From Oikopleura dioica (lineage: Eukaryota > Animalia > Chordata), in the NCBI GenBank assembly GCA_907165135.1, contig OU015569.1, forward strand, positions 8,494,001-8,558,000: a stretch of DNA of 64,000 bases. Direction: 5' to 3'. A model generated the notes under the pieces. It saw only the letters and a program-made list of their open reading frames with translations, was not told where the DNA came from and ran no database searches. This document shows positions 2,560 through 55,318 of the stretch, in pieces (within the stretch, counting starts at the first letter, position 1; each line of letters begins with the position of its first letter). Position numbers and translations under genes: made by a program.

Positions 2560-2849
2560 GCTAAAATTGAAGATGCAGAAGGTCGGGTGAATAAGGAGAG
2601 TTTTAAATAAGAATTATGAATACAGAAAGAATTGTAACGAAAGTTAAGAACACGGAGGTCAGTGGAAATCAAATTGAGACGACAGAAATATCTTTGAATA
2701 TGATGAAATAGGAACATTGTTTTTAACTTAAAAGGTATGCAAGTAGGTAGCAAAAGGGTGAAGCCGTCAAGAACGATAGAGGGATAAAAGTAACGGCACG
2801 GTCCGTCACACGGATAGGTGACTGGGCGATGGCTGTGCTCGATGGAGAC

Positions 2850-5800: not shown

Positions 5801-6395
5801 AGTTGGAAACGTGTTCTTGAGTTTTGACATATTGAAGCTTTCTAAGAATCTGTTTTTGCTGTTTGACCTCTTTTATGTCCTCGTGGTCCTCCAAAAGATC
5901 AATAAATCTACGACGTTCGTCATGAGGCCAAAGTAGAACGTCAAAGTCAGATTCAAAAATAGCTGCCGGGTTATCACGGGGGACGATTTCAACATGTTCA
6001 CCGGATAAAGCAGTAGCGATCACACTGTGCCGATGCTCTTGGGAATAGTACCCATCGAAAATCACCAACCATTGGTCTTCAATTACTTTCGTTTCGAAAT
6101 CCGAACTTTCATCATTTGCAGAAGTTTGAAGTTGTCGCTTGCTTCTGAATATCATAACGCATTCGATTAGCAAGATTTATTTATACCTTTTGCGGCGCCA
6201 TTCCAACACTGATCTCTTGATGTCTTCTGCGCTGTACACACTAAGTGCGATAGCAGTGGACGTTTGAGGCAAGCAACTTGAACATGGCTTGACGGTTATA
6301 TCAACGATAGCGATAGGGTCTAATGTGCGAATTGTGTCCGGCAACACGAGGCTAAGAAAACAGATGCTGAGCGCGAGGAAACGAAGTATCGTCAT
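2850..6395 (-). CDS. MBTPS1: Membrane-bound transcription factor site-1 protease (S1P, subtilisin S8)
   Basis: Catalytic D (AIFDTG), H ([10 protein letters not shown]) and S (SGTSVASP); [11 protein letters not shown]; [19 protein letters not shown]. Signal-peptide exon 6177-6395 is spliced to the large exon. The terminal TM exon [21 protein letters not shown] ends at TGA 2850-2852. Confidence 0.97.
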
Positions 6396-6553
6396 TTGCG
6401 ACGCTTTCTCCTTGTCAGCATGACGATCTCAACTGGATCAGTACTCTTAATAGAAGGCGCCTAGTAGCGAGTATGTATAAAAATATATTTATTTATAGTA
6501 TAAAAGAAAAGAATAGTTTAGCACTGAAAGGAAATACTGGAACGTTGAATTTT

Positions 6554-8328
6554 CATTTTTTAGATTGGGTAGGCGCGGGAGTAATCGGCGCAGCGGGCGT
6601 TAGTGGAGGAATCGTCAGCCCATGATTCTGAAGACACTCTGCCCATTTGGTCTTTTCGAGTTTTCTCACAATTTCGATGAACTGTTGCGTAGCTGAATTC
6701 AATTTTGATGTTGATTTATAAGAGATTTAGAATTGCCTTGAAAAGCTTCTGTATCTTCAAAAAATTTCCAGCTCTTCTGGTTAAGCGCGAGATTGACTTG
6801 TCGAAGAGCTATGGCATCTGTTGTTCGTTCAAGTTGTTCTTCCAGGATTTCAGCAAGACGCAGAATACCGAAAACGGTGAGCTTTAAAAGCCGAAATAAT
6901 GTAAAGAACGCAGAATAAGAAGCTTACGTGGTTAGCGCTCAAGTTCAAGTGACAAAGGTGTCTATTGCCAGGTTGGAGCATAATTTTGTCCTCACGCTTG
7001 ATACCTGTATCATCTGGAATTGTCACCGTTTTAGGAGCGGCTTTTGGTGGAGGCTTGGATGTGTCTGTGGAGCTAGATGTCGCCTTTAATGGACTTATTA
7101 CTTTGATCAAGTTTTGATTATTACCCAGGTTTGACTCTTCCGCTTTTTGTCCGGGGCATCTTTATTTCCTCGAGTTTTTCTAGGAGGCGGCGTAGATTTC
7201 GCTTTATCGTCTTTTCTCTTGTTAGGGACCAGACGAAGCTGAGAATCAGAAGTGAAAACAAGTGCCATCCGTTTTTTCCGCCATTCATATATTTCTGACG
7301 GAATCATTTCGACCATTTTTGCAAAGGCTACGCGGATGTGCTCGATACAAGTGTCTGTTAGGCCACAGTTGCTCGCCGAAATAGAAACAAGTTTCTTGTT
7401 TTGAATCAATGAGCGGAAGATGTAATGAAAAATTTCATCGCCCATCTGAGGATTGTTATTCAGCTTGAGAGTTATCAGTGATGTGTTGAGACGTAGTTCA
7501 TTTGCCATGGGAATAAGGTCAGCACTTCTTAAAGAATTTCCCTGGAATCCAAGATGTGGTATGCCTTTTCTGTCATTCGTTTTTTACTTTTTGAATGATC
7601 GTTAACCTTCTTTTTTTCAGACCAAAGTTGCCATCAATTATCATTATTGCATGAAATCAAGGAAGAAAGCTACATATAGAATTGGACATGCATTAAAGTA
7701 ATGCCGATAGAAAAAATTCATACACAATCATAAAAAACCTTTCCTAAGTGCAGCTAACCAGAGATCTCCAGGATTTGGGTTACCGTAGATCTGCACAGTT
7801 TTGACAGAGGATGGTAGTGCTATGAGATTGAAGATATCACCACACAGTCGACTTCGGAAAAAATATACAGATTCGAGTTTGTCAAGCTTTGTCAGACATT
7901 GACTTATAACCTTGGCCTCAATATCTCGGATATGAAAGTTTCGGAAATGAACAGAAGTTATGTTTTGCACCGTTGTTTTTCCTTCTGGCTCTTCTTTAAA
8001 GAGAACGTTTACTCGTGGCAGGTGCTTAACTATGATATATTGTCCGTTGAACTGATTTAAAGTCTAATCTACTGGATTGAACAAGCATCAATCTTACCAT
8101 AGGGGCTTCCTGGTGGGACTCGATTTCTTCATTTTCCGCAAGATTTGTTTTGAAAGAGTAAACAACTGGTGGATGAGTTACGCCAAGCGCTCTCAAATAC
8201 TCCGGTAAGTCAACTTCAATATTCCCTGTCAGTGCATAGCCTGAAGAATCAGCAGGTGGCTTCTCATCTAGGATCGGTTCCGGTTTGATGTCGGTCTTCG
8301 AGACTCCCGCTTTCTTCTTGGGAGGCAT
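6554..8328 (-). CDS. LRRC71: Leucine-rich repeat protein LRRC71-like
   Basis: LRR segments (ELRLNTSLITLKLNNN, LVSISASNCGL) and LRRC71-like blocks ALTGNIEVDLPEY and REDKIMLQPGNRHLCHLNLSAN. One internal junction near 7560-7640 was not resolved. Confidence 0.75.
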
Positions 8329-8413
8329 TCTTAAAAAAATAATTTATAGAATTTGTTGAAACGAATAACAGGTATTTATCTGGAAAGACGGACAGAAATT
8401 ATGCAGACAGATA

Positions 8414-9569
8414 TTAATCGGAGTCACTGTCGGAACCGTAGTCAATACCAAAAGGATTGGACGAAGAAGAAGAGGGTTCATTTTCTGGCGATGTTGAGGG
8501 TGTTGACTTTGATGGAAGTTCAGACGTATCTTTCGTTGTCTGAATATTCAATCACTCATCAAATAAAATTAAATAAAAACCAATATGCATTATAAGGATA
8601 TCCAAAAATTTTACCTGTGTTATAGATTTTCCCTTGACTTTTATTCCACCAAATCCTTTCGAGAGCGCTTTTTTCGTATCGACAGTTTTCTTTTTCTTTC
8701 CAGGTACTACTGGAGGAGCCATTTCTGTTTTTCTTTTTCGTTCTTCAAGCACCCTAAATCGATCGTTTTTATTAAAATTTAGGTAGTTGCGTTACTTCTT
8801 GAAAGTCTCGGTCTCTGGCTCATCCTCATCTAACTCTTGCTCCTTACGCATGACTTCTCGCGCAAGCTTTGTCAATATAAGATCGTCTTGTTTGGCTTTT
8901 TCTTCTGCACCTTCAAGAACGTTCATTAGCAACAGGTCGTCGGATATCTTTAGCTTAGCTTTCCTCTCTTCTGTCAGCTCAGAGAGTTTCTCCATTAGAA
9001 GCATCTCTTTCTGGGAATCTTAAAAAGACATCCTTAGTGTCAAGAATGACTAAAAAATAAAACCTTGGGTTCTTTTCTCTAAAGCTGCCATCGGATTTTC
9101 TTTAGCATCTTTTTCGCGTTTCTCCTTTTCTTCTTTTTCCAAGGTCGCATTCAAACGTCTGGTTTCGAAAAGTCGTGTTGCACCCGCTTCCATTGCATAG
9201 TCCTAGAATTATTGTTGGGAAACCGAAAGTGAAAGGTAAACAAACAATAGCTTCTGGATCTGTGATGAATGTAATGTTGCTGACACAGTTAAGGCAACGA
9301 ATGTAGAATCTTCTAATCGTTATGTACTCCAAGTACTTCGGATAGTCGGTGGCCGCTTCGACTCTTGAGTTGAATTTCGTTCCACGGTACATGTAATGAC
9401 CGCAAGTGTTGCATCGAATGTTCCAAGGCAACATAGTACGGATTTCCATAATACGGTCGCGACCTTGACCGCCCTGGCCCGACCAGTTTTTGAGCGTCTT
9501 TAGTCGCGGCAACTTCTCCGGATCATAGTCCGGAGGATAGTACTCATTCATGCATTTGTGATCTCCCAT
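8414..9569 (-). CDS. YJU2: Step-1 splicing factor YJU2/CCDC94
   Basis: YYPPDYDPEK, CNTCGHYMYRGTKFNSR, CLNC and ITFITDPEAIDYAMEAGATR (spliced), then a coiled coil and the C-terminus GIDYGSDSDSD-stop at 8414. Confidence 0.9.
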
Positions 9570-9673
9570 TTTTTATGACCTTCGACAATCTATTAATGGT
9601 CAAGTTTAGCTATCATCTGTGTTGCAACAGCACTTAATTTCAATCAGAAAAATCGAATTCATTTTTAGTTTAT

Positions 9674-10796
9674 TCATAAATGATCGGGAATATCAGAATC
9701 AACAAAATGATTGAGCAGGAAAGACGCTTGCACTTCGCACTTTGAGTATTGCGTACTCGACAAATTGTTCTTTTTGGCAAATGCATCGGCTCTGGTGTCG
9801 CCGATGTTGATAACGAAAACATCCTTCCCATGACTGATAGCTTCTCTGATGAAGCGAAAGCCTGACCAAACAAAGAGAGACGAACCGACTACAAGGCAGG
9901 CATCGTTGTTTCGAACTACAAACAAAGATAACCAACTGCCTTTTTAGTACTATTTACCGCTTTGATAGCAACTTTGAACAAGATTGTAGTTAACATTATC
10001 ACCAAAGAAAGTGACATCAGGTTTCAGAACACCGCCGCAATATGGACAATCGCAAACTTGGAAGCCTTGTATCTGGTCTGGAGTTAAAACAGAGTCCGCA
10101 TCTGGTGCCATGACAGTTTCCTATAATAAGTCTTAATCAAATCATCCGTTGCGACTCACCTCTGTAACGGGGGTTTCCCAATTGACGTTTGCCACGTCAA
10201 GTAATGTTTGAAGCTTGGCCCTGGCAATGATACGATGACAATCAAGGCAAACTACTCGGTGATTGTTTCCGTGAAGTTCCACCAGATCGTGGCTGCCAGC
10301 TTTGAGATGCAGCCCGTCGACGTTTTGCGTAACAAGATTTTTAATCTTTCCGCGCTTGATGAGTTTGTCGATAGCATCGTGATTCGCATTTGGCTGCCGA
10401 ATGGAAAAGTACTTGTAGCCAACGTAATTTCTTGCCCTTAATTATCAAAACTCAATATAAATCGAACGTTTTTAATCAAGCTTTAAGCTCGGTAATACCA
10501 ATAGCGCTGCCGATTTTTCGCCGAGCGAACAAACTCTTGGTGAGTGATTGGTTTGTGATTTTCTCGGTCGTACAATCCTACGCCCTTGCTTCGGTAATCG
10601 GGAATACCAGATTCTGTTGAGATCCCGGCCCCTGTCAAACAAAACAAGGATTCGTTGCGATTTAAAAACATCGAAAATGCCTAAAATATTCATCATCTCA
10701 TGAAATTGTTGACTCGCTCACCTTCAAATCGTAATCTGTCAAAGAACGCGCCGCAGGCACGAACATGCTCTTTACGCTTTGTTTTGCTTGTTGCAT
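9674..10796 (-). CDS. SIRT4: NAD-dependent deacylase sirtuin-4
   Basis: [79 protein letters not shown]. The start codon choice is uncertain. Confidence 0.93.
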
Positions 10797-11147
10797 CTTT
10801 ACTTCAGTATTTATCGGTTGAAATGAACTCTTTTTCAAAAATCTTCATCAATCCAAAACGAATTGCCCCCAGACTTGGCAACGTTGCGTCGAGATGATCA
10901 CATGTTACGTAACTACTTCTAGGTAAGGAGCTCTCGCATACTAGAAAATTATTTTTGATGATTAAAAACGATAGAAGAATAATGGAATATTGCATTTGAA
11001 TGAATGAATGAAGAATCGTTTGTTCATAAGGGCAAGTGTTTTCATTGGAGTTGAAGAAAAAAATCCGGTTCTATGGGCTTTAAGAGTTCAGTCAGATGTT
11101 CCGAAATTCTACTATCTTTTCACTTTAAAGCTTCAAGTCTATAAAGA

Positions 11148-12775
11148 CTATAGACTGAAGTAGTTGTCTATCGAGACTGACCATTCCTTGTAAGATGTTC
11201 CGCCAATGAGAGGTTCATCTATGGTGCCGGAGATTTGAATTTCGGAAGAAGATTCTTTGTCAAGGACTGATCCTTCTATCCTCTGCTCGCTGAGATACGA
11301 AAGGGTGATGGTTTGTTTGAGCTCTCGATTTTGCATTTCCCATTTTCCGCTCCACGATAGAGAAGGTGTACTGAGAGGGTGGTGAATTCTAACACTGGGC
11401 ATTTCGGTGACGTTCCAGAACTGTATACCAATATTTAAATCTAAACAGCAGATTTAAGCAATGAACCATGTATCTTCCTCAGCTACCTGTCATCAATGGC
11501 TGGATAAAAAACGGTCTGCCGGGTCCTTGAAAATTTGACTTGAAAGATAGAGTGAATTTGATCAGCAGTCCATTGGCAATCGATACTTTAAAAACAGGTC
11601 CAGGGAAGGCTTCGATTTGAAGATGCTTTTCGCCAAATTTACACTCGTAATACTGCGGTGACTTTGAAGGGATTCGATTTCGAAAAACAGAACCTTAAAG
11701 TGAATGATTGAACATGTAGTTAAATTTGTTACATACTAGGGCATTTTAAAGACAAAAGCCATTTCGCGAGATCTGACGGGTCCGTCGTGTCTGGACAATG
11801 GCGACAAAGGTAGCCGATGTACAATGCTCCAGAGTTTCTGAATCTTTGCAAAAGGAAGAATTCAAAACTAGTTTACTTTGATATCGACCAGCTAGGCCAG
11901 GATCCAGAAAGTAAGTTTTCCCCTAAAGGAATCGTCTGCATTATCGAGACCATATTGTCTCTTTGATCATCACTGTACTCCACGAGCGGCTCTTCGAACT
12001 CGATTTTTTTCGGCACCCAGGGCGAACGACTCTCTTCCTCGACGTCACTGTCGTCTGACAGTTCACTCTTCCTCTTTTCTCTTTCCAGTTCAGTTGGATT
12101 GGGCATTTTCCGCAATTCGTTTCTCCCGAAGAAAATGTTTCGTTCGGCAATGTCCGTGGCACGCTCTAGTGACTGGATAGCCGACCTCCCATAAGATTTG
12201 AGCTTCAAATAGGTCTCGTTCATCGGCAATCTGTCGCACTAAATCAAGGATTTACCGATCTGATAACTGGAAAGGTTGTGAACCTGATCTTCGATTTCGG
12301 ACAAATATTTTCTCGCCGCAGCGAGACTTTCTTTTGCAGCCTGAAGATGTTCCACATTTTTGGTGGCATAATTATCGGTGATCTGATGATTCGTCACTTG
12401 TGAGACATACTCTGGTGGAAGCGGTTTTTGAATTCCTTTAGCCGCAGATCGTAACTGATCTATCCAAATCTGCCGCGAACGAGCGTCAGCCGCTTTCAGC
12501 TTGAAAATATAGCCATTTGAAGCTGTGATAGTAAACCCATGGCCGTCTTCGTCCGGCGTCACCACTGCATCTACCAAAGGCAGCACTCCCCGACGGTTAG
12601 ATCTGTCCCCTTCGGGATCCCTGAACAAGCTCATCAATCGAATTGTCTCGCAAAGATAATCAATTCGAAAAGTGACCTGCCTCAAAAAGTACTCCAGTAA
12701 ACCATTTTCAATGATAAAAAATCGTCGTTGCCAACCTCTTGCAAAGTTTGTATATTTGTACAAAGTCCCATTCAT
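11148..12775 (-). CDS. OSBP-related protein (ORP9/10/11-type PH domain) with a degenerate, shortened lipid-binding domain
   Basis: PH domain LYKYTNFARGWQRRFF...RGVLPL...FKLKAADARSRQIWIDQL. The downstream exons align only loosely with the ORD (QRDNMVSIMQTIPLGENL; EMPSVRIHHPLSTPSLSWSGK). Confidence 0.75.
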
Positions 12776-13000
12776 TCTAAAGTCTACGATGCTCTTTAAT
12801 TCGAAGATTGATGCTTTTCAACGTGGAAAACAAGAATATTTTTGCGATTTTTTATTGAAAAATGTATTCCAGCTTCTACTGACTTGATTGCACAACGATA
12901 ACTGATAGGAGTCAGTCGGATACTTTTGTAGTAAGGCCTTTTTGAAGTAACAGGCGATTTGTTAACTTTTCCAAAATTAAATCTAGTCCAAGTCGAGACC

Positions 13001-15046
13001 CTAAAGCGCTTCTAGCCGCCGTCTTCGTAGTTCGTTTGCATTTTCTGGCTCGTCCTCTTCGCTATTTTCCACGTCTCCCTCTAGTTGGGGTTCTTCTTCC
13101 TCAGATGAATCAGTTCCATCCTTCGTAGCACTAGGGATAGTCTCAACCCTCTCACTCTCTTTGGATTGAGAAGATGGGATATTTGTGGCAGGGTTTGCTG
13201 GCCCGTCGAAATACTGATCCATTTTGAAAACGGCGGCGTCGAGCAGGAGTCGGATTTCCCTGAAATTTTGAATTGATAAAAGAAAAAATGACTTTCTCTT
13301 ACCTGAGATGCTTTACTCGAGCTTCCACGCCGGCCCGTTCGACCGATTCCATTAGACGAAGTTCGTCTTCGGTTAATTTTTCGAAGTTTGTTGGAGGGAA
13401 TGGCGGTGGTGGAGGTCGCGGATGACGCTCCAGATTATTGATTAGATTTTGAACTTGAAGTACATCGTTGCTATTATTTAAATATCCGAGAGCCGCGTCT
13501 CCGAAGATGAGCGGTGCCACAGGATTCCTTCTTGTACTTGAAGTGTTTCTCTGACTAGCGTTTTCTTCATTTTGGCTCGCTCTGGGCGCTCTTTCGTTTT
13601 GTTGAGCAGCACCACGTCTCCCTTCAGCAGCGTTTTGAGCATTTCCTAGGAGGTTATTCTGCAGCTCTTCTAAGGCAGCTAGAAGCACTTTCTTGAAAAT
13701 ACGAATGTAGTTCGATTGTTACCTCGTTGTCTAGCTAATTGGTCGGGCTCACGAGCTTCTCTCGCGGCAGGCGTTCTAGCCCTCAACACGTCAAGTCGAC
13801 AAGTAGGGCAAGTTTGCTGACGCTGAAACCATGAACGAAGACAAGCTGCGTGAAATATGTGACCACAGGGAAGTTTCTTCGAACTTAAAGACCTTTTACC
13901 GGCGATTATTTATATGGGCACGCTACCTTGTGCCAGCCACCATTTCTTCTCGGCAAATAATACATGTGCTATCATTTGCCAGCTCTTCCTCTGTAGCATT
14001 CGCATAGAGATGAAGTTGATTGATTGCACGGCGTGAAAGAACAATGTCTGACAGTGCTTTTCGGAAAGTGCGAATCGCCAGATACATAGGTCGAAGGGCG
14101 AAGATTGGGAGTGTGTGGATCTTCATTCAAAGTTTGTCAATTTTGTCAAGCTCTACCCGCTTACCTTGAACATGATACAGATGAAAGTCGCGTACAAAAG
14201 AAGGCGGGAGAAACTGACAATCAAGTCCAAATATAGCATGTACCTGGCAAAGGACAAATAATGTGTTCTTAGATATTATAGTTGACTTACATTGACTTAT
14301 TTTCCCAGGGATCCTCGCTGCGTAAGTCGATCGAATGAAGAATGAATTTGAAAAAGGCAGAGAAAGCGATGGTAAGAAGGATGGCGTATTCAAAGCCGAA
14401 AACGAGTTGGACGGTAGCACCTTTTGTCATGGTTCGTTCATAAGCATACCAAACTCCAAAGCTAGAAATAAGCTCGGAACGGTTTTTATTCGAAGACGAA
14501 TTACCTGTCAGCGAGAGAGAGAATAGCAAGAAGAGATGTGATTCTTATTTTAAAGAGCCATGTTATCACTGGAGATCGCTCCATGTAGTCTACTCGATCC
14601 TTGATTTATTATATAAGAGAGAGAAGAAGTTAATTCTTTACCTCGCAGAGCCAGTGGAGACCTTTTAGCAAGAAGAAAATCGTGAAAGCAGCGACGAAAC
14701 CAGGAGAAAGGTCGTCACGGAACATTGTGAATGCAAGGCACGTATCAATGATCGCGTACCATGTGCGTTCCATCAAGTTCTCCGCTTCGGCAGGTCTTAG
14801 AGTTCCGAAAAACACCTGAATCAAACGTAAGTTCGATCATTTGATGCATTGATTCACCTTTCCGACGAGTTTGGCGAAAAGAAAAACAAGAACGAATGCT
14901 TGTATGTAAAGAATGAGCATGGACTGATTGCTGCGGGTAAGGTGGACAACTGTTGGATAAAATTGCTTCTTCTGCATCCACGCATTAGTAACGACCGCGG
15001 TCGTCATTGCCAAGGAGCCAAGGACGGCAATACCAGTTCTCAGCAT
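13001..15046 (-). CDS. SYVN1: ERAD E3 ubiquitin ligase HRD1/synoviolin
   Basis: [61 protein letters not shown], and RING-H2 CIICREEM...[28 protein letters not shown]. Confidence 0.97.
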
Positions 15047-15217
15047 TTTTCTCGATTTCTCTTCTATTTCAACGTCAAGGTCGTATCTAAAAAAGAAAAA
15101 GGATTCAATCAAATAGCTACGAAAGTGACATTAATTGTATAAAAATATAACAGCTAGACAGTAAGAAACTAGAGTTGATAATCTGAAGAAATGAATATTG
15201 CGAGAGTTCACTGAACT

Positions 15218-16174
15218 TCACTCTTTGAGGTAATCGTCTTCGTTGTCGGGCACTTTCGCGCGGAGCTCCTTGATCTGGACGTTCTTCTTGTCCAGCAAGA
15301 CTTTCATGTTTTTGTAGACTGATGTTTCTCTAAATTTCGCGTCGAGTTCTTTTTCTTTGGCGAGTAAATCTGAATTGTTTGATTTGATTATTTTGTATTT
15401 TGAATTGTCTGGGTGCACTAACCATTCTTTACGACCAACAGCTCGTTTTTCATTTTCTCCAAGTCACCGCTATCTGCGTTTTTCACCGAATTCAGCGAGC
15501 TCTGCGCTGCAAAAAGGTAAAAATTAATTGGGATCCGGTGGTCGTACCTTTCGTCTTCTCGGAAATAGTGGAAGAGAGACGCTCTTCTAAATTTGCGTTT
15601 TTCTCTTTGAGATTTTGATTCTCGAGGCTCATTCTGTCGATCTCTTTTGCAGCAGCTCGATGGGCCCGTCGCCCTGGATTGGGGTCAACTTCGATGGAGA
15701 GCTGAAAGAGAGTATTATGGTTGGAAGCGAGGACGAAAGACGTACGTTTTTGTTCCACTCTCGTTTTGCTCGAACTCGCGGATGAGACTCAGTAGCTCCA
15801 GGTTTTCGACCTGTTTTACATCGCAGGAGAGTTTGAGTTTCCATTTGTCGGCTTGCTGCATGACCTGGCGCAGCAGGAGTGCGGAGACATCGCATGAGTT
15901 GATTAACTCTGATTCTACTTCGTCGACGATGCTTCGCTGCAGTTCGTTGACCAGGTCTCGCACCTAGACAATAAAATATTCTAGAAGCAAATAAATCCCA
16001 AAAACTCACCTCGTCCTGGGTGAAAGTGTCTTCTTCCATCACTCGTGTATCCACAAAATCTTGAAAAGCGAGCTCGATTCCGATAACCTTCTCTTTCCGC
16101 TTGTATCTCGAGTAACGGAGGAGCTCGAGAATTTGATACTTATGATGCTCAGTTAGCCCAAGGGAATTCTCCAT
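15218..16174 (-). CDS. LZTFL1: Leucine zipper transcription factor-like 1 (BBS17); apparent 1-nt frameshift at 15645-15648
   Basis: LGLTEHH, EDTFTQDEV, EVESELIN, LLLRQ, ENLELL, KELDAKFRETSVYKNMK. The frame switches between ELLQK and EIDRM. Confidence 0.92.
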
Positions 16175-16290
16175 TTTTTCTCTAAAATTTTAAATTTAAA
16201 AATATATATTAATGTTATCGGGAATACAGTATGGTGGTTAAAATAAACGCGGTCAGTATTTCGGATCCCTCTTGAAAAGGCAACGAAAGC

Positions 16291-16298
16291 TGACGTCA
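16291..16298. promoter_or_regulatory. Perfect CRE/ATF palindrome TGACGTCA about 120 bp upstream of the first gene of the co-directional cluster
   Basis: Motif is directly visible upstream of the LZTFL1 ATG; function is inferred only. Confidence 0.3.
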
Positions 16299-16437
16299 CG
16301 CTCCAGGCACTGCTGCGTCATCGTAGAACCAAACTAACCTCGCTTCTCCGATTTAATATTCTGACTATGCGTAAAGTCTCGAAAAAATATATTTATTGAA
16401 TATGAGATATATCTTTTCGGGTTGACTTCGTTAATAG

Positions 16438-16638
16438 ATCATATGATTTTGTATCGAACGTTTTCGTTTATTGGATAAACTTCATCAGGATATTTTATGT
16501 TGAGAGAGCAGTGTGAAATTGCTAACAGTTAGCTTACAGTTAGCTAACAGTTAGCAATTTCACACTGCTCTCTCAACATAAAATATCCTGATGAAGTTTA
16601 TCCAATAAACGAAAACGTTCGATACAAAATCATATGAT
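16438..16638. repeat. 201-bp near-perfect palindrome (foldback/MITE-like)
   Basis: Two 89-bp perfect inverted arms (16438-16526 and 16550-16638) around a core of 3 x GCTAACAGTTA. Both ends are the self-complementary ATCATATGAT. Confidence 0.9.
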
Positions 16639-17063
16639 GAATATGAGATATTAAGAATATTGTTTCTTTTAGTTTTTCAAATCATTTACAATCAAAAAAA
16701 AATATAACTCTTTTGTGAAAACGGTTTATATTATTTTTGGCTGAGTTTAAATGAAATAAAAAATCGCAGAATTTTCTTCTTTGGTGATTAAATCATACAA
16801 AGATCTTTGATAAAAATCTTCCCGAGTTCTTCGTCGTCGTTTGAGGAGTTCTGATTGAGAACTTCTGAGGCTTCTGAGCATAAAGATTTGTGGGATCAGC
16901 GAACTGCGTACAATAAATAACACTCTAGTTACTTTGAGCTGGGACTTTATTGTTAAGTACAAATATGGAAATGGTGAATGCACGGAAGTTACATAATAAA
17001 GTGGTGATCGAATAAGTACAGTCTGTCGAGTCCCACAGATTTTAAGATATGAATCATATCATA

Positions 17064-29347: not shown

Positions 29348-29918
29348 GATGAATTACCATAACAATTTTTTGGCCGAAAAAAATTTTTTGAGATAATGGC
29401 ATATTCTGAAAGCCCAAGTCAAAATTAGTCGATCCCCAAATTTCTAGGGCTCAATGACGTCATTATGACGTCATTTATGATTAATAAATGTCCGAAAAGG
29501 CTCCAAATTCATGAAACTTTGGAACGTTTTTTGAGACGGTTATCGTTTAAAATATATTTTTCTGCCTATAGCATGTTGTTAGGCAGGAAAAATTACGTGG
29601 GGACCCGAGGTTAATTTTTCGAACCGACCGGTTTCGAAAATTACCGGACACTAGAACCGGTTGGTAATGATGGTTTGAGCCCGGGTCCCCACGTATTTTT
29701 TCACGAGGAATCCGAATCCGCCGAGAAAATAAGGATTAAAAAACGTTTTTGGCTCTAAAAAGCGTTTCAAAGATAAAATTTTCAAATGAGCCGGATGACG
29801 TCATAATGACGTCACATGGCCCTAGAATTTGGTGATTCTGTCTAATTTTTTATGGGCTTTCAGAATATGCCATTATCTCAAAAAATTTTTCGGCCAAAAA
29901 TTCTTATGGTAATTCATC
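29348..29918. mobile_element. 571-bp MITE with GATG...CATC termini and 4-bp TSD (CAAA); family copy 1
   Basis: About 125-bp imperfect TIRs, each with two TGACGTCA; internal inverted ACGTGGGGACCCG / CGGGTCCCCACGT. Lies about 57 bp upstream of the hnRNP M ATG. Confidence 0.85.
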
Positions 29919-30242
29919 CAAAGGTACATCTAAGCGGCCGGGAGTAAATCGTTTCAATATAAACATTAGTGTTGAAGAAGAATGCTATAACGTCTCGTGG
30001 GGACAGATGTCCAAATTAGCATTAGTTACTGAGAACAAGGATGACTATGGCGTTAGTCTACATGTTACGCCGCTATCTGTTACGACAAATATTCGGTTTT
30101 ACTGCCACAAGGATGCCGGGTATTGACGTAAATGAGTGTCGGTTTATTTCTAGAAAAAAGAAACAGAATAATTACTGATAGTAATAGAAAAATATCGTTG
30201 GAAAGTAAAAAAATATGAAAGAAAAGCGAAAAGAAGAGGAAA

Positions 30243-32446
30243 TCAATGAAGCTGCTCAGTTAGAATGGGCACTTGCTCGGGTGATGTCGACCAGAGTTTG
30301 TAAAGATTTGATGACATCTCCTCGAAAGCTTCCAGAACGCCAACATTTTCTCTAGCAGAAGTCTTAAAATCGTAAATGACTTAACTTAGGAAGAGTAACA
30401 CCTTGAAATATTTTAAGCCGAGATTATCAGCAAGGCGTCTTGCTTCTTTATCTGTTACAACGTGGCGGTCAGGATTAATGTCATCTTTATTGCCAATGAG
30501 ACAGCCGGGTACTTTGACATCTAGCGCGCGAAGCTTGCCAATCCACTTTTCGACATTATCAAATGACTTTCGATTCGTCAAATCGAAGACAACAACAACG
30601 ATAGCTGAAAGTGAATTTAACGATTGCCTGTGCTAAGTGAATACGATGAAATTCCATAAGAATTTTTCGGCAAAAAATTTTTGTGAGCTATCAGTAGGGA
30701 AGTCACTAATAATTTGAGCATTTTTTCTAGCTTAGTAGGGTGGGCATATAATACAGTTTTAGAATCCTCAGAAGCTGAGGATCATTTTGACTATTGATAG
30801 TGAGGGGTCATCTCGTACCCTGAGGGCATTTTGGTACCTCCAAAAGTCCAAAATTCTGGCCAATTTCGGAAATCCGTAGTGATGACCCCCTAACCCCCGC
30901 TTTTTCGCGCACGGTTTAGATATGTTGTAGCCCAGGCTCTGAGGGTCATTTCTAGGGGTCGGAAAGTATTGATTACCCCCATTCCAGAGGCGCTAGAGAC
31001 CTCTGAAGTTTGGGAAATCGACCAAAAATAGGTACTTTTTGGAAAAAGTGCATATTTTTCATCAGTTATGCTTTAAAAACGCCTGTTATCACTTATGCTT
31101 TCCTTTTTCAGAGTAGAGACATAGTTTGGTGTCATCTGAGGTCATTTGGGATCACTTATCATAATTTCAAGAATTTTTATAATTTTCACCTCAGATGACC
31201 TCGGATGACACCAAACAATGTCTCTACTCTGAAAAAGGAAAGCATAAGTGATAAAAAGCGTTATTAAAGCATAACTGATAAAAATATGTACTTTTTCCAA
31301 AAAGTACCTATTTTTGGTCGATTTCCCCAACTTCAGAGGTCTCTAGCGCCTCTGGAATGGGGGTAATCAGTACTTTCCGACCCCTAGAAATGACCCTCAG
31401 AGCCTGGGCTACAACATATCTAAGCCGCGCGCGAAAAAGCCGGGGTTAGGGGGTCAACACTACGGATTTCCGAAATTGGCCAGAATTTTGGACTTTGGAG
31501 GTACCAAAATGCCCCCAGGGTACGAGATGACCCCTCACTATCAATAGTCAAAATGATCCTCAGCTTCTGAGGATTCTAAAACTGTATTATATGCCCACCC
31601 TACTAAGCTAGAAAAAAAGCTCGATTATTAGTGACTTCCCCTAGCTATCAGCATATTCTGAAAGCCCGTATCAGAATTAGTAGAATCCTAAATTCTAGCA
31701 CTTGATGACGTCACGATGACGTCATCACTGATGATTGATGGTCCAGAACCGCGGAACCTTAGGTACGCTTTTTGAAGACGTTTTTGTCGAAAAAATAATT
31801 TTTTTCTTTGCAGGAGGTTGTTCAGCATCGAAAACTACACGGGAATCCGGGTTCGAACCGGCCATAACCAGCCGGTCATTTTGGCGGTTCAATTTGTAAC
31901 CGGTCGGTTCGGAAAAATTCTTCCGGATTCCCACGTAGTTTTTGATGCTGAATAACCTCCCGCAAAAAAAATTGCTTTTCAACAAAAACGTTCTCTAAAA
32001 GCGTACCTAAGTTTCTAGGATTCTTCACCTTCAATCATCAGTGATGACGTCATCGTGACGTCATCAAGTGCTAGAATTTGGGGATTCCACTAATTCTGAT
32101 ACGGGCTTTCAGAATATGCTGATAGCTCACAAAAATTTTTTGCCGAAAAATTCTTATGGAATTTCATCATACCCTACTCACCGATCATGTCAAAATGGGG
32201 CTCAATAAGCGGCTCGAATAGGTTCTCACCCGCCAAGTCGGTTAAAATAAGACAAATCTCGTCCTCCGTTTCAGTCAAGTCGATTATTTTCGAGGAAAGA
32301 TTAACTGAGGTTGTCATCTGGTAGTTCTTGGGAAACTCAGCGCCGTCTGAGACCAGTGCTTGACATAACGCTGTTTTGCCGACTGAAGCATCTCCCACTA
32401 TTCCGCATTTCACCATTAGAGTCTGGCCGTATGCATCAAAGCCCAT
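30243..32446 (-). CDS. IFT27: Intraflagellar transport GTPase IFT27 (RABL4/BBS19)
   Basis: KCGIVGDASVGKTALCQALVSDGAEFPKNYQMTT, DLAGENLF, FDLTNRKSF, PGCLIGNKDD, KYFKTSARE. Three exons; intron 1 spans 30605-32181. Confidence 0.92.
30645..32168. mobile_element. GATG...CATC MITE family copy 2 (4-bp TSD ATAC) in IFT27 intron 1, interrupted by a hAT-like foldback
   Basis: Same TIR layout and paired TGACGTCA as 29348-29918, with the interior in opposite orientation. It is 567 bp after removing the nested element and one TSD. Confidence 0.85.
30695..31643. mobile_element. 949-bp hAT-like foldback element
   Basis: 8-bp TSD GCTATCAG (30687-30694 and 31644-31651), TAGGG termini, about 450-bp near-identical inverted arms and a spacer of about 40 bp. 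Confidence 0.9.
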
Positions 32447-32528: not shown

Positions 32529-32967
32529 TTACTTGGCGAGTCCATTTTCCCGGGCAAGACGGTAGATAGAGTCGTCGGACTCACCCATGCGTCGGAGAGC
32601 GCCGCAAATGGCGAAGGTGGTGTTAGTTCGGAGCATCGTTCCGGTGGTGGGGTCTACGTCACAGAAGTTCAATTGGATTGAAGACTTGTCCTGGGTTTTG
32701 TTTAAAAGACTGATGGAATATCCCGGCATAAGATTAATATTGCTAGATCCTATCACCTATAAAAGCAGCAAAGATGTTCCCACCGTTATTTTGAAATACA
32801 CTTAAATGTATCAAGAGGTACCCAAAATGGCTCTTTTCTAACCTAATTCCCATGCCCGGCGACTTTTTAATTTTTTAAGCAATTACCTTTGCTCCAATGA
32901 GCCTGTTTGAAGCAGTGCACTTTCGGGGGATGTACAAATCAACAACACGTCCTTCGTCGTTTTGCAT
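32529..32967 (-). CDS. RPS21: 40S ribosomal protein S21
   Basis: [27 protein letters not shown] | DKSSIQLN...[21 protein letters not shown]; one 196-nt intron (32691-32886). Confidence 0.98.
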
Positions 32968-33174
32968 TTTGAGTAAATACCGAGTCTGAAAACGGACGCC
33001 GTTGAGAGTGGTATAGAATGGGGTAATATTCAAACGAAATTGCAGGTCTGGACAGAAAACGAAGAAACACACTACACAAGAGTTGCCCTTAGAATGATCT
33101 TAAAAAAGTTGTTTGATGGTTCAATTGAAATGAAGTTGAGAAATATTTTGCAATTGCAGGCGCTCTACGCATTG

Positions 33175-35279
33175 TCATCTTCTGCTACGATATCGATCGG
33201 ACCGGCGATGTCGTTCACGTGATCTGTCACGGGAGTAGCTTCTCCTCCTTCGCCTGTGTCGATCCGAGGATCGACTGCGTGATCGGCTCCGGCGATCACG
33301 TCTCCGCTCTCTGAAAACCGCTCAATAAAAATTATTCCATTGTGTGACAAACCGAGAACGCGACCGCGCTCTAGTATTTTCCGATGATGATTGTCTTTTG
33401 TTGTATTCCTCTTTGTGCTCTTCACAGTATGCCCCTAGGTCTGCAAGTCGCTTTCTCAGCTCGATAAATCCCAAGTGCAGCTTTCCACCAAAGTGATCAG
33501 CCAAACGCCGGTCGTTATCGTGAAGTCCAAGATAAGAGGAGCATACTGAGACAATAATAAAATTTATCCAAATTGAGTTAAAACTTACTGTCGCAAACTC
33601 GTAGTCTTTGTTGTTGCAAAAGCAGGGTGGCTATTTTGGATTTGGGGGTTAGTTGGAATTGGATTGGATCCAATCCAATAAGGTTTGGATGGAATTTGGA
33701 TGGCCAGGGTACCGGATTTTGTTGGGGAAAATTGGGCAATTGGGGGAAATTTGGGGAATCGGATCCAATAAAAAATATATCCCTAAGCTATGCAAAGTAG
33801 GGTCATTTTCATGATGAAAATGAACAATTTCAGATAAAAAAATCATCGTTTGGCAGAGTTGATCCTCCTTTCTGATAAAAACTTACTGTTTCCTTTCTTT
33901 TTAAAGTACTAGAAGCCTTGGAAAAATTGGAAACCCAATTGGATCCAATTGGAATTGGGGATTATTGGGAAATTGGGTAAAATTGGATTGGATTGGATTT
34001 TGGATGGATAGCTTCGACTCAAAATTTATTGGATGGAAATTGGATGGCCAGACCCCGAAATTTTGTCCAAAATAGCCACCCTGGCAAAAGTGAAGATGGC
34101 ATAGAGTTGCGGTAGTTTTGCTCTGCTTGTCTTTTTTCTTCGCGAAGGGTCTCTACATCTCGTAGAATCTGTGATACAATATAAGCAGTATTCTTTTTCG
34201 ACTGACTTACTTCCTGTGACTTTCCGACTTCGCCTTCCATTCCTGCCTTTTCCGCATCAGCAAGAAGCTTGCCGATCTTTTCATTGATTTCATGGACGCC
34301 ATTTGCTTTTTCTTCGATTTCCTTAACCGAATATGGTTACGCGAGGGTTACTTCAGCGGGATTACCTTAGATATATCGGCTTGTTTTTCAGCTAATTTAG
34401 TTTTCGAAAGTTCTATTCGTTCATCAGTTTCATCAATAAATTTCTTCAGAGCACGGTGGGCCTAAGAGTAATTTTGTGATTAGAATATGCGAATGAAAGG
34501 GAGAAGAAATATGTTGAAAATTGTGAAACACCACTTCTCTTTCATCTCGCACTTACAAACGAGTTGAGCGACTCACCGAATCGGTTTAACTATAGTTCTC
34601 GGTTGTAGAATGCGCGAGATAATATCTGGGATATTTAGAAGCAAAAAAAGATAACTCACGATTTTTATTTCCCACGAAATTTTGGTAGGTAGAAATGCCA
34701 AGACTGAGGCGACTGAATATCAAATCTTAGCTCGAGTTCTGTTTACTCGGATTGAGAAGCGGGCTCGTCAGCTGCTGTTTACCGCAGTAAAAGACGAGTC
34801 TGACTACTCTAAGCAGAAAGCGGCGAGAAACTTCATTTATGATAGTAGGAATTGCTTACAGTAATCAACTCTAAGCTTACTTACATCGAATTCATACATC
34901 AGCGAGTTGTTCTGTTGTCGGACTCTCTCGTAATCAGAGCGTAGAGCCAACGAATGTTCTAGTGGACAGTTGCCGATATCGGCTCTCTAAGAGCACATGT
35001 TATTACCCATTAAAAGATAGCATTAATGACCGTAGACGTCAGGACATCGTGTGGGCAGCATTTGAGGAGAAAGGGTCGGCAAACGTCGCGACCTTCAAAT
35101 CGGGTAGACATAGTTGGTGTCTCCCCGTCTTCATTCTAGTTTATGTTTAACATGCCCGGAAAAGTCAGATGGAAATGAAACCCTGGCTCTGTGGAAAGAT
35201 AAAAAGTTCGTCCTACCTGATCATTGCGACCCGATCCCATGAGCTCGTTGAGCATCGATCTCATATAGTCCGTAGCCAT
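33175..35279 (-). CDS. LUC7L: U1 snRNP-associated LUC7-like protein; one coding exon interrupted by a MITE
   Basis: MLNELMG, VCRPFLLKCCPHDVL, HSLALRSDYE, YRNSMP, QQQRLRVCDICSSYLGLHDNDRRLADHFGGKLHLGF and an RS-rich tail. LUC7L and LUC7L2 are not distinguishable here. Confidence 0.93.
33623..34083. mobile_element. 461-bp hAT-like MITE inserted in a LUC7 coding exon
   Basis: 18-bp perfect TIR CAGGGTGGCTATTTTGGA, 7-bp TSD GCAAAAG (33616-33622 and 34084-34090), and about 25 internal TTGG motifs. Confidence 0.92.
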
Positions 35280-48934: not shown

Positions 48935-49618
48935 ATGAATCGTGACGAATTCTATAAAGCGCTCGTGGCCGACTTTGTAGCACTCATTGGCGAGTCCGAT
49001 GATGTTATTTCCAATACAGCAAATCTTTCCTCTCTCATATTCACGCGCCTCAGGGCTCAATATGGCAACGGATTCAAATATCTATCCTAATCTCCAGCTA
49101 CTTCTAGTTTGCAATTTTATATTCGCTGTTTTTAATTCGCATCAGAGAGGATGCAACTAACTGGGCCGGTTTTTATTTCCGATCTTGCGAAGACCAGCTT
49201 AAACTTGGACCGTTTTGTGGAGAACCTGCCTGTCAATTGTTGCGATTTAACAAGGGTGTCTGTGGAGCAGCGGCGAGGGATAAAAAGACCTTGCTTGTTG
49301 AAGACGTTCATGAATTTCCAGGACACGTTGCGTGTGATGAGCGAAGCAATTCGGAGCTCGTTGTTCCAATTTTCTTTTCACCGAAGGGTAAAAGCCCCAT
49401 CGTAATTGGGGTTTTAGGAAATGGTCAAGAAATTCTAACGTGTTAACCTATTTTAAAGCATCACAAAGACTGCTTAAAAAGACATGGACTCTCCTAAAAT
49501 CGGAGGCTTCTCTGAGGTTGATCAGAAATACTGCGAGAAGCTGGTGAAGGTTCTCGAAGAACGATGTGATTTTCAAAGAATTCTTGACTATTACAATCTC
49601 AAAACCGATCCGCTCTAG
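48935..49618 (+). CDS. msrC: Free methionine-R-sulfoxide reductase (fRMsr/MsrC, stand-alone GAF domain)
   Basis: NTANLSSLIF, NWAGFY, LGPFCGEPAC, KGVCG, VEDVHEFPGHVACD, SELVVP, GVLDMDSP, FSEVDQ; three exons. Confidence 0.93.
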
Positions 49619-53538: not shown

Positions 53539-55318
53539 TTATTTCTGAGATTCAGCCTTCGCAGACTTCTCGTTTTCTTCCTGGGATTTGCCAGCGTTGG
53601 CCTCCAGAACATCCTCTTTCTCTGAAAATACAGATTTAGATCCTAGTTAGAATGAAAAGTTTACCTTCGGGAGCTTCAGGAGCCTTCATCGTGTTCTCCC
53701 CTTCATCAGCGGGGGAAGGAATCACTTGACCCAAGGATTCGGGAAGTTGTGGGTCTTCTTCTACAAAAATAGTACAATTAAATTATTTGACACGTTTTTC
53801 CATTACCTTCGCCAAAGAGGGAGGAGCCAGTCTGAGAAAATGAATCCTGGTGAGCTTTCTTCGGGCTAGTTTGAGTTCCCTCGTTGATTCGCTGGTAGGG
53901 GTTTCCCGTTCGCGCTCGTTTCTTCGCCATCTTGCCAGATCGAAGTGGGTGACGACGGATTCGGTTGGCCCAACTCCCGCAGAGTGTGAACGTGCAGGAG
54001 GGGTCAAGCTGAGTGAAGGAGATGCAAGGGACCACGCCGCCGGTGTGAACTCCTGCAGAGACTGCTCGTGGGCCCAAGTTGGCGCAAGTCTCGGTGTGAG
54101 TCCTTGAGTAAACAGTAATTAGGTGCATGTTGAGCCGGAAATCAAGATCAAGCTCAGCCTGGATAATCTTCAAAAATGAAGATATGGAAGACTAAAAATT
54201 AGAAGTCTCTGAAAACTTCCATGATAGGGTAAAATTTGATTCTGATTTTGATGCCGCTATCGTTAAAGTCTTTTGATGTAAGATTTTTGAAATAAATCAC
54301 TTCCAATTATTATCAGCTGCTTAAATCAAAGTAACTTTCTTAATTGCTTCCGGTTGGAAGATTTGAAAAACAGCTGAAGAAAGAACAGAAATCATGATTT
54401 TTATAAGGAAAAGCTTCATTTTTCTTTCGTTCAAAATGTGTGATTACCAGAAAATAGCAGATACTTTACCGATTTCGAAGATAACTGATATTTCACTCAT
54501 CAAACTTTTTTGAAAATGAATTGTTCTTGTTTGAATCTTCGCAAAAAAACTTGAATTTTTGACATAAGAAACACATTCCAACTCCACAATCGTAATCAGC
54601 ACTAAATTTTACCATAGTAGGTATGTTTTCAGAAAATTCCATATTTTCTGTCTTCCATATCTTCATTTTTGAAGATTATCCAGGCTGAGCTTGATCTTGA
54701 TTTCCGGCTCAACATGCACCTAATTACTGTTTACTCAAGGACTCACACCGAGACTTGCGCCAACTTGGGCCCACGAGCAGTCTCTGCAGGAGTTCACACC
54801 GGCGGCGTGGTCCCTTGCATCTCCTTCACTCAGCTTGACCCCTCCTGCACGTTCACACTCTGCGGGAGTTGGGCCAACCGAATCCGTTTTCCCCCATCGA
54901 AGTTGATAGCCTAAACGAGGAGTTTTTATTCAAGAAAATAAAAAATATATTAGGGATACCTTCTTGGGAGGAAGGATTAGTGGAAGCATCGTCCCAAAAT
55001 CTCCAGCCCTCTACATCAAAACCACCGCAGTCTACACGGGAGTTGCCACCGTTCTCAACGATCGCCCCTTCACCGGCGACAGTTTCCTCGTCTGGTTTTT
55101 CTTGGGAAGAAAGCTCCGTCATCTTCTGAGAGAGTTGCTTCACCTCAGCCGTCTAAACAGAAAATAAAAGTAATAAAAATGAAAATTAAAGTGCGAAAAT
55201 TTACCTCAGGTTGCGAACTTGGAGCAGGTTGGGAATCGCTTTTTGGCTGAGCAACTTCCTTGTTTTCCATCTCAGGGACTACCTCAGACTTCTGAGTCAA
55301 TTCTGGCTGAGACCCCAT
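53539..55318 (-). CDS. Orphan low-complexity acidic/charged protein; exon 3 interrupted by a foldback element
   Basis: Five exons join in frame through canonical GT-AG introns once 53947-54895 and one TSD are removed (...SSQEGYQLRSGKMAKKRARTG...AESQK-stop). No homologue recognised. An in-frame TAA at 55391-55393 lies upstream of the chosen ATG. Confidence 0.6.
53947..54895. mobile_element. 949-bp foldback element with 8-bp TSD and GGG termini (Mutator/Merlin-like)
   Basis: TSD ATCGAAGT (53939-53946 and 54896-54903); 238-bp identical inverted arms (53955-54192 and 54650-54887) with a diverged inward extension and an AT-rich core. Confidence 0.88.

What the first reader, a model, noticed from the sequence alone, without database searches (positions are those of the whole stretch)
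33606..34090. Transposon inside a LUC7 coding exon that carries its own splice signals: candidate newborn intron (introner)
Seen: the 461-bp element splits the conserved YRNSMPSSLL / QQQRLRVCD exon and has internal stops, so it must be spliced out or the allele is null. On the sense strand its TIR begins CAG|GGTGGC; the other end has ACTAAC (33648-33653) 18 nt before a TAG (33631-33633) lying within the TIR. A GG-AG intron 33631-34080 (450 nt) restores frame and adds PATLLL. Alternatively, a GT intron 33606-34079 to a host AAG gives SSLLPGLRVC. GT with the TIR TAG frameshifts. A CAG|GG donor is also the best-fitting donor in the fRMsr gene of this window. Inference: a MITE family pre-adapted to be spliced through non-canonical donors, here in a 5'-splice-site selection factor.
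Basis: partly seen in the sequence, partly recalled or inferred. Interest (0 to 1): 0.85.

Follow-up and report, generated by a model that had tools for sequence, protein, structure and literature searches.

The report
Young transposon splitting a LUC7 exon
A 461-bp miniature transposon very recently landed in a conserved coding exon of the splicing-factor gene LUC7 in a planktonic tunicate (Oikopleura); another individual still has the uninterrupted site, and no RNA could be read to show whether it is spliced out as a new intron or simply breaks this gene copy.

Summary
A 461-bp element (33623-34083) has perfect 18-nt terminal inverted repeats and a 7-bp target-site duplication. It splits exon 6 of an otherwise intact 8-exon LUC7-like gene, inside an invariant peptide block. 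Retention gives a stop after 21 codons.

New here: the insertion is polymorphic. One DNA run of the same species has a contig with exactly 468 bp missing and almost identical flanks. Another run has flank, duplication and inverted repeat as in the window. Element words are about 100-600 times deeper than single-copy flanks, so the family is abundant.

The intron reading is untested. The two raw RNA runs came from a 5-10% divergent lineage whose exon is uninterrupted, and they gave no reads from this allele.

There are 33 in-frame, stop-free G*-AG solutions, and every shuffled element also offers one.

Verdict: a very young, segregating MITE insertion. It is a candidate newborn intron of a known kind (introners, larvacean MITE introns, maize Ds1), but about as likely a broken allele carried beside an intact one.

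The scan has noted several similar exonic insertions elsewhere in this genome, none with RNA proof.

The parts
33623..34083 (.). 461-bp non-autonomous DNA transposon (MITE). No protein domain and no known RNA family. Member of an abundant family.
   Evidence: inverted repeats and duplication; exact absence in the X25 contig; element words at depth 8,000-41,000 against 69 for the flanks; no Pfam or Rfam match.
33623..33640 (+). Terminal inverted repeat, arm 1 (CAGGGTGGCTATTTTGGA). On the gene's strand it ends ...AAAATAG|CCACCCTG and holds the candidate acceptor AG at 33632-33631.
34066..34083 (-). Terminal inverted repeat, arm 2. On the gene's strand it begins CAG|GGTGGC. Candidate GG donor at 34080-34079, candidate GT donor at 34079-34078.
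34084..34090 (-). Target-site duplication, upstream copy (CTTTTGC on the gene's strand)
   Evidence: 'both = 7' at the 33615|34084 joint.
33616..33622 (-). Target-site duplication, downstream copy (CTTTTGC)
33589..34168 (-). LUC7 exon 6, interrupted. 85 nt upstream and 34 nt downstream of the element, counting one duplication copy on each side. Without the element and one copy it encodes ILRDVETLREEKRQAEQNYRNSMPSSLLQQQRLRVCD.
33175..35279 (-). LUC7-like gene: 8 exons and 7 GT-AG introns (42-81 nt, plus one of 423 nt). The product is 305 aa once the element and one duplication copy are removed.
   Evidence: 90.8% identical to O. dioica CBY34037 = P0160. (Pfam PF03194).
33648..33653 (-). ACTAAC motif about 17 nt upstream of the repeat-borne TAG. 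Branch-site-like and present in this orientation only.
   Evidence: Function not tested.
33606..33607 (-). Host AAG| candidate acceptor, used in the GT...AAG model that replaces QQQR with PG

Best explanation
This is a very recent, still segregating insertion of an abundant non-autonomous DNA transposon. The element is a MITE with an Ac/Ds-like CAGGG... terminus and a 7-bp target duplication. It sits in exon 6 of the single-copy LUC7-like gene of an Oikopleura dioica lineage.

Shown: the insertion, its structure, its presence/absence polymorphism, the intactness of the rest of the gene, and the stop codon if the element is retained.

Inferred: in the absence of any RNA evidence, I take the allele to be most likely a loss-of-function or strongly weakened copy. 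The element would be retained or mis-spliced, giving a premature stop. Such a copy would persist because it is young and carried beside an intact allele. At most part of its transcripts would be rescued by fortuitous splice sites.

Nothing in the sequence shows that the element is built to be spliced.
For: - Structure: perfect 18-nt inverted repeats and identical 7-bp duplication copies.
- Empty site as DNA: the X25 contig (3,317 nt) joins 33615|34084 with 0 and 2 mismatches over 716 + 1,121 nt of flank. Its depth is 68.8 against 73.0 for the next single-copy contig.
- Filled site as DNA: X31 contig 8 runs 32900-33640 with 0 mismatches. Its depth is 40.9 against 86.1 for the adjoining contig, which is compatible with heterozygosity.
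- The rest of the gene is intact and 90.8% identical to O. dioica LUC7-like, so this is not a decaying pseudogene.
- Retention gives a stop after 21 codons, and skipping exon 6 shifts the frame.
- Frame-restoring splice pairs are no more than chance gives.
- The repeat-borne GT donor frameshifts with the repeat-borne TAG.
- Both repeat-borne sites lie inside an 18-bp perfect stem.
- Any scar would fall in the block NSMPSSLLQQQRLRVC, which is invariant in all larvacean LUC7 sequences recovered.
Against: - No RNA from this allele was seen, so disruption is as unproven as splicing.
- 461 + 7 = 468 is a multiple of three, though this has a one-in-three chance.
- A repeat-to-repeat GG-AG splice would leave 18 nt in frame. 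O. dioica is known to use about 10-12% non-canonical introns, GA-AG being the type named in those sources (PMC8008620, PMC7072748).
- Native donors and acceptors of this gene are themselves weak (GTCATT, GTTTGT, AACTAG, GTTAAG), so weak sites may suffice.
- Earlier notes of this scan list many other exonic transposon insertions in apparently essential genes of the same assembly. If real, that is easier to understand if such insertions are tolerated.
- The half depth in X31 is a contig-wide mean and is not proof of heterozygosity.
Confidence: 0.5

Rival explanations
1. Newborn intron through G*-AG splicing. The permissive Oikopleura spliceosome removes most of the element and leaves a small in-frame scar or deletion. 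There are three routes. (a) The reader's repeat-to-repeat GG-AG, 34080..33631, adding 18 nt (PATLLL). (b) GT 34079 to the host AAG at 33606, removing a net 6 nt (PG replaces QQQR). (c) GT 34053 to the repeat-borne TAG at 33631, adding 45 nt.
For: All three are in frame and free of stops. Route (a) would leave the same 18-nt scar (3 + 8 + 7) at any insertion phase and in either orientation, because both sites lie in the inverted repeats (inference). An ACTAAC lies about 17 nt before the TAG. The window's fRMsr gene needs a G[G/C]-AG intron and a GA-AG intron. O. dioica has about 10-12% non-canonical introns (PMC8008620, PMC7072748). Introners that add a few codons are known (PMC9860276, Aureococcus, +12 bp).
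Against: No RNA evidence. Such solutions exist in 100% of shuffled elements. The candidate intron is 420-475 nt, in a gene whose introns are 42-81 nt with one exception. The repeat-borne sites are sequestered in an 18-bp stem. The scar or deletion hits an invariant motif next to the second zinc finger.
Confidence: 0.3
2. Exact removal at the RNA level. The element plus one duplication copy (468 nt) is cut out precisely with non-GT/AG ends. The paired inverted repeats would bring the ends together, as in the MITE-derived non-canonical introns of Fritillaria.
For: 468 = 3 x 156, and exact removal restores the invariant peptide. The predicted RNA folds strongly (-119 kcal/mol, z = -4.96) with the ends paired. 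Fritillaria introns carry inverted repeats and duplications and use AG-AC, AG-AT and other ends (PMC11282704, PMC13326754). First-reader notes report CT-AG-type junctions with terminal stems near this window (unchecked).
Against: None of the eight possible registers has a G at the start together with an AG at the end (one search gives ends GC..TG on the + strand). GT/AG and GV/AG introns are the commonest class (43-90%) in four of the six tunicate genomes compared in PMC13326754, a group that leaves out F. borealis and F. pellucida and so should include O. dioica; the U2AF duplication linked to non-AG ends is reported only for the F. borealis lineage. In RNA this outcome looks the same as transcripts of the empty allele, so it needs genotyped animals.
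Confidence: 0.08
3. Assembly artefact or dead duplicate. The interrupted copy would not be the functional LUC7 locus.
For: None positive. It is considered only because a stop-containing exon in an essential gene is suspicious.
Against: An independent contig of run X31 carries the flank-duplication-repeat junction with 0 mismatches. Flank depth equals single-copy depth in X25 (68.8 against 73.0). The empty-site contig is the same locus. All other exons and introns are intact.
Confidence: 0.02

Closest known systems
Introners: transposon families that create introns on insertion (Huff et al. 2016, cited in PMC13326754; Gozashti et al. 2022, PMC9860276)
   Same: A short non-autonomous element with inverted repeats and a target duplication, in many copies, found inside a coding exon of an aquatic eukaryote. 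Splice sites could come partly from the element and partly from the duplication or host. Cases that add a few codons are documented (Aureococcus, +12 bp).
   Different: Introners are defined by being spliced and by many genic copies serving as introns. Neither is shown for this family. The repeat-borne GT gives a frameshift here, and only a non-canonical GG donor or host-derived sites keep the frame.
MITE-derived non-canonical introns of Fritillaria borealis (Henriet et al. 2019, as summarised in PMC11282704; PMC13326754)
   Same: Same animal class (larvacean tunicates). Introns with inverted repeats and target duplications at species-specific positions. Spliceosome tolerant of non-GT/AG ends.
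   Different: In Fritillaria 95% of introns are non-canonical, and the lineage has duplicated U2AF subunits. In this gene all seven resident introns are GT-AG. No exact non-canonical removal has been shown here.
Maize Ds1/Ds insertions in exons that are spliced from the message (Dennis et al. 1988 and Wessler 1991, cited in PMC3260210; PMC5395267)
   Same: A short non-autonomous element with a CAGGG... terminus (Ac/Ds: C/TAGGGATGAAA) lying in an exon. Sites in or near the termini could be used, giving leaky alleles with small scars.
   Different: Ac/Ds makes 8-bp duplications and this element has 7 bp. Splicing of Ds alleles is experimentally shown and usually partial; here it is hypothetical.
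Ordinary segregating transposon-insertion null allele
   Same: Presence/absence polymorphism, near-identical haplotype background, a stop codon on retention, and an otherwise intact gene.
   Different: Nothing differs on present evidence. Only RNA or homozygote viability can separate this from a newborn intron.

Membership tests
MITE / non-autonomous class II transposon | Terminal inverted repeats | tested here: met
   18/18 complementary arms at 33623-33640 and 34066-34083
MITE / non-autonomous class II transposon | Target-site duplication and an empty site elsewhere | tested here: met
   7-bp CTTTTGC on both sides. The X25 DNA contig lacks exactly 468 bp, with 7 ambiguous letters at the joint.
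MITE / non-autonomous class II transposon | Short, non-coding, many copies | tested here: met
   461 bp with no Pfam domain in its ORFs. Hundreds of contig pieces are laid on it and its word depth is about 100-600 times single copy in X25 and X31. Shorter deletion variants exist. The copy number is rough only.
hAT superfamily | Terminus of the C/TAGGG type | tested here: met
   CAGGGTGGCTA... against Ac/Ds C/TAGGGATGAAA (PMC3260210)
hAT superfamily | 8-bp target-site duplication | tested here: not met
   The duplication is 7 bp. No 8-bp register fits. Only one copy was examined.
hAT superfamily | Related autonomous element with a hAT transposase | not testable with these tools
There is only one copy in the window.
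Introner | The element is removed from the mRNA by the spliceosome | tested here: inconclusive
   The RNA runs X11 and X12 gave no reads of this allele and come from a divergent lineage with an uninterrupted exon. No transcript-derived protein of this lineage was found.
Introner | The element supplies or recruits functional splice sites beyond chance | tested here: not met
   There are 33 formal in-frame solutions. All shuffles give a G*-AG solution and 53% give a GT-AG one.
Introner | Many family copies serve as introns in genes | not testable with these tools
   No access to other copies. The metagenome scan for the inverted repeat gave only chance 18-25-nt matches.
Fritillaria-type MITE intron | Exact removal of the element plus one duplication copy with non-GT/AG ends | tested here: inconclusive
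   The arithmetic allows it (468 = 3n). No RNA was available, and the outcome looks the same as the empty allele without genotyping.
LUC7 (host gene) | LUC7 N-terminal domain with two zinc fingers | tested here: met
   Pfam PF03194 on exon 7 (E = 1.7e-13; a weak sub-threshold match on exon 5, 22 bits against a cut-off of 33). 90.8% identity to the O. dioica LUC7-like protein.

The most novel reading that the evidence does not exclude
The family is a phase-proof introner. Because both candidate sites (CAG|GG and TAG|) lie in the inverted repeats, every copy, in either orientation and any codon phase, would be spliced by Oikopleura's permissive spliceosome. Each would leave the same 18-nt, stop-free, in-frame scar (3 + 8 nt of repeat + 7 nt of duplication). 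That would make exonic insertions of this family nearly harmless, here even in a 5' splice-site selection factor.
Probability: 0.1. Interest if true: 0.75.

Novelty: new member of a known kind. Interest (0 to 1): 0.35.

Why it matters
Intron birth from transposons is accepted in outline but is rarely caught at the presence/absence stage in an animal. This site offers a clean natural experiment. The same locus exists filled and empty on almost the same haplotype, in a culturable chordate with a permissive spliceosome and no minor spliceosome. The hit lies in an invariant block of an essential-looking splicing factor.

If carriers splice it, the junction would show directly which weak or non-canonical sites Oikopleura accepts. 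Together with the other exonic insertions noted in this genome, it would show how a compact genome survives transposon bursts. If they do not splice it, this is an ordinary deleterious insertion allele.

Tried and rejected
- RNA evidence: the single read-laying run went to two raw RNA runs with the same species label (X11, X12). They are from a lineage 5-10% divergent, covered LUC7 at only 1-4x, and show an uninterrupted exon (LQQQRLRVCE). They say nothing about this allele. With hindsight the metatranscriptome contigs X1-X3 should have been laid.
- Metagenome scan for any junction form (both exon anchors with a 0-30 nt gap): 0 hits.
- Metagenome scan for the inverted repeat: 20 loci, all chance 18-25-nt matches and no family member.
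- Protein searches for transcripts or gene models of the window's lineage found only other larvacean lineages, all with an uninterrupted NSMPSSLLQQQRLRVC.
- Exact look-ups of four window ORFs in public contigs: nothing on record.
- A splice-site weight matrix from heuristically called introns of the window failed.
- LUC7's long 423-nt intron was checked for inverted repeats as a possible older insertion: none.
- Rfam and Pfam on the element: nothing.
- Rejected: a dead paralogue or an assembly error.

Full report
**What is there.**
On the minus strand the window carries a LUC7-like gene. The ATG is at 35279 and the stop ends at 33175. It has 8 exons, and all seven resident introns are GT-AG: 81, 44, 423, 44, 42, 43 and 42 nt.

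Exon 6 (34168-33589) is interrupted by a 461-bp element at 33623-34083.
- The element has perfect 18-nt terminal inverted repeats, CAGGGTGGCTATTTTGGA. This is the only pair in the window; 0.05 matches were expected by chance.
- It is flanked by a 7-bp direct repeat, CTTTTGC on the gene's strand, at 34090-34084 and 33622-33616.
- It has no Pfam domain and no Rfam match.

Removing the element and one repeat copy (468 nt = 156 codons) gives a 305-aa protein.
- It is 90.8% identical to the Oikopleura dioica LUC7-like protein CBY34037, with residues 120-195 around the insertion point identical.
- Pfam LUC7 (PF03194) matches exon 7 above its cut-off; exon 5 gives only a weak match below it.
- The interrupted peptide NSMPSSLL|QQQRLRVC is invariant in every larvacean LUC7 sequence recovered.

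**Which organism.**
- The closest named protein is from O. dioica.
- The DNA and RNA runs that hold the stretch are of one species label or are marine plankton metagenomes and metatranscriptomes.
- Reads on the neighbouring RPS21 gene carry a leader that, from my memory of the O. dioica spliced leader, matches it.
- Earlier notes of the scan call this genome Okinawan O. dioica (not tested here).

**The insertion is real, young and polymorphic.**
- Empty site. Run X25 has a 3,317-nt contig covering 32900-33615 and then 34084-35204 with nothing between. It skips exactly 468 bases, with 7 letters that fit either side. Mismatches are 0 on the left flank and 2 on the right. Its depth is 68.8, against 73.0 for the next single-copy contig.
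- Filled site. Run X31 has a contig running 32900-33640, that is flank, duplication and the full 18-nt repeat, with 0 mismatches. Its depth is 40.9 against 86.1 for the adjoining contig. This is compatible with heterozygosity but does not prove it, because these are contig-wide means.
- Abundance. Words of the element have summed depths of 8,000-41,000 in X25 and 2,500-16,900 in X31. Hundreds of short contig pieces lie on it, and some join 33703 to 34061, which indicates shorter deletion variants. The family is therefore abundant, although these sums are not a copy number.
- Age. Identical repeats, identical duplication copies and about 0.1% flank divergence between the filled and empty haplotypes all point to a very recent event.

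**What the RNA data say.**
They say nothing about this allele.
- The two raw oligo-dT runs chosen (X11, X12) map at 95-99% on RPS21 but only at 90-95% and 1-4x on LUC7.
- At 34088 their reads leave the window sequence and continue, on the gene's strand, CTT CAG CAG CAA AGA TTG CGC GTC TGC GAG. That is LQQQRLRVCE, the uninterrupted exon of the CBY34037-type lineage.
- No read touches the element.
The metatranscriptome runs X1-X3, which hold 15-22% of the gene's words at near-identity, remain the obvious untested source.
- Other routes also failed: a scan of metagenome contigs for any junction form, protein searches for transcripts of this lineage, and exact ORF look-ups.

**Are the splice signals more than chance?**
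  - Retention stops after 21 codons.
  - GG-AG 34080..33631 adds PATLLL.
  - GT 34079 to the host AAG at 33606 replaces QQQR by PG.
  - GT 34079 with the repeat-borne TAG frameshifts.
  - Skipping exon 6 frameshifts.
- An exhaustive list gives 33 in-frame, stop-free G*-AG solutions.
- Counting only solutions that remove at least 80% of the element, the real element has 3 GT-AG and 22 G*-AG solutions. Of 300 dinucleotide-preserving shuffles, all gave at least one G*-AG solution and 53% a GT-AG one. The real counts are unremarkable: 15% and 32% of shuffles reach them. The reverse orientation does as well.
- One property is specific. Because both repeat-borne sites lie in the inverted repeats, a repeat-to-repeat GG-AG splice would always leave 3 + 8 + 7 = 18 nt, whatever the phase or orientation. 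This is an inference. A scar length divisible by three has a one-in-three chance, but it is a clean family-wide prediction.
- Against it, both sites sit inside the perfect 18-bp stem of a strongly folding RNA (-119 kcal/mol, z = -4.96). The would-be intron is about ten times longer than the gene's usual introns.

**Context from the literature.**
- O. dioica has about 11-12% non-GT/AG introns, with GA-AG prominent (PMC8008620, PMC7072748).
- The window's fRMsr gene indeed needs a GA-AG intron (49418-49481) and a first intron that is either GG-AG or GC-AG.
- Transposon-born introns are an established kind.
  - Introners with inverted repeats and duplications, some adding a few codons (PMC9860276).
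  - MITE-derived non-canonical introns of the larvacean Fritillaria borealis (PMC11282704, PMC13326754).
  - Maize Ds1 elements spliced from exons (references in PMC3260210; PMC5395267).
- The terminus CAGGG... resembles Ac/Ds C/TAGGGATGAAA, but the duplication is 7 bp rather than 8 bp. hAT membership is therefore not established.

**Verdict.**
- It is a newborn transposon insertion in a LUC7 exon.
- That it is an intron, or that the family is pre-adapted for splicing, is not shown, and the sequence argument for it is no better than chance.
- I put about 0.5 on a disrupted or weakened allele carried with an intact one.
- I put about 0.08 on exact non-canonical removal, and about 0.02 on an artefact.

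Earlier notes of this scan describe several similar exonic insertions elsewhere in the same genome, in POLA1, OATP, SAC1, astacin and others. None has RNA proof, and at least one is likewise absent from other individuals. That pattern is a lead worth a genome-wide test, not evidence.

Noticed in passing
window 32875-33072 (minus strand), boundaries at 32988 and 32903: An RPS21-like gene ([27 protein letters not shown]...) lies about 190 nt downstream of LUC7 on the same strand and is highly expressed (about 400x in X11). 353 reads in X11 and 119 in X12 end at 32988 and continue with a leader. Its reverse complement reads CCATTTTTGAGTCCGATTTCGATTGTCTAA, which from memory matches the O. dioica spliced leader. 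This suggests SL trans-splicing and perhaps a LUC7-RPS21 operon.
   Followed up: partly
window 48935-49618 (+): An fRMsr-like gene with no GT-AG introns. Intron 1 is either GG-AG (49054-49145) or GC-AG (49055-49149); both keep the frame. Intron 2 is GA-AG (49418-49481). No RNA check was made.
   Followed up: partly
window 53946-54896: A foldback with 254-nt arms, 98% complementary and 443 nt apart.
   Followed up: no
window 29377-32171: A cluster of nested inverted and direct repeats (arms of 53-217 nt, 76-98% alike), starting about 1 kb downstream of the LUC7 stop, beyond RPS21. It is probably a nest of transposons.
   Followed up: no
window 16438-16638: A near-perfect 100-nt + 100-nt palindrome (98%, 1 nt between the arms).
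   Followed up: no
window 34462-34884: LUC7 intron 3 is 423 nt, in a gene whose other introns are 42-81 nt. It has no terminal inverted repeats, so it is not an obvious older copy of the same kind of insertion.
   Followed up: yes
window 33703-34061 (within the element): X25 contigs join 33703 to 34061 with 11-12 other letters between. The family therefore also has short variants of about 110-120 bp that lack the central part.
   Followed up: no
runs X11/X12 against the window: RNA runs filed under the same species label differ from the window by 1-5% in RPS21 and 5-10% in LUC7 exons. The label therefore covers deeply divergent (cryptic) lineages, and runs must be chosen by lineage, not by name.
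   Followed up: partly
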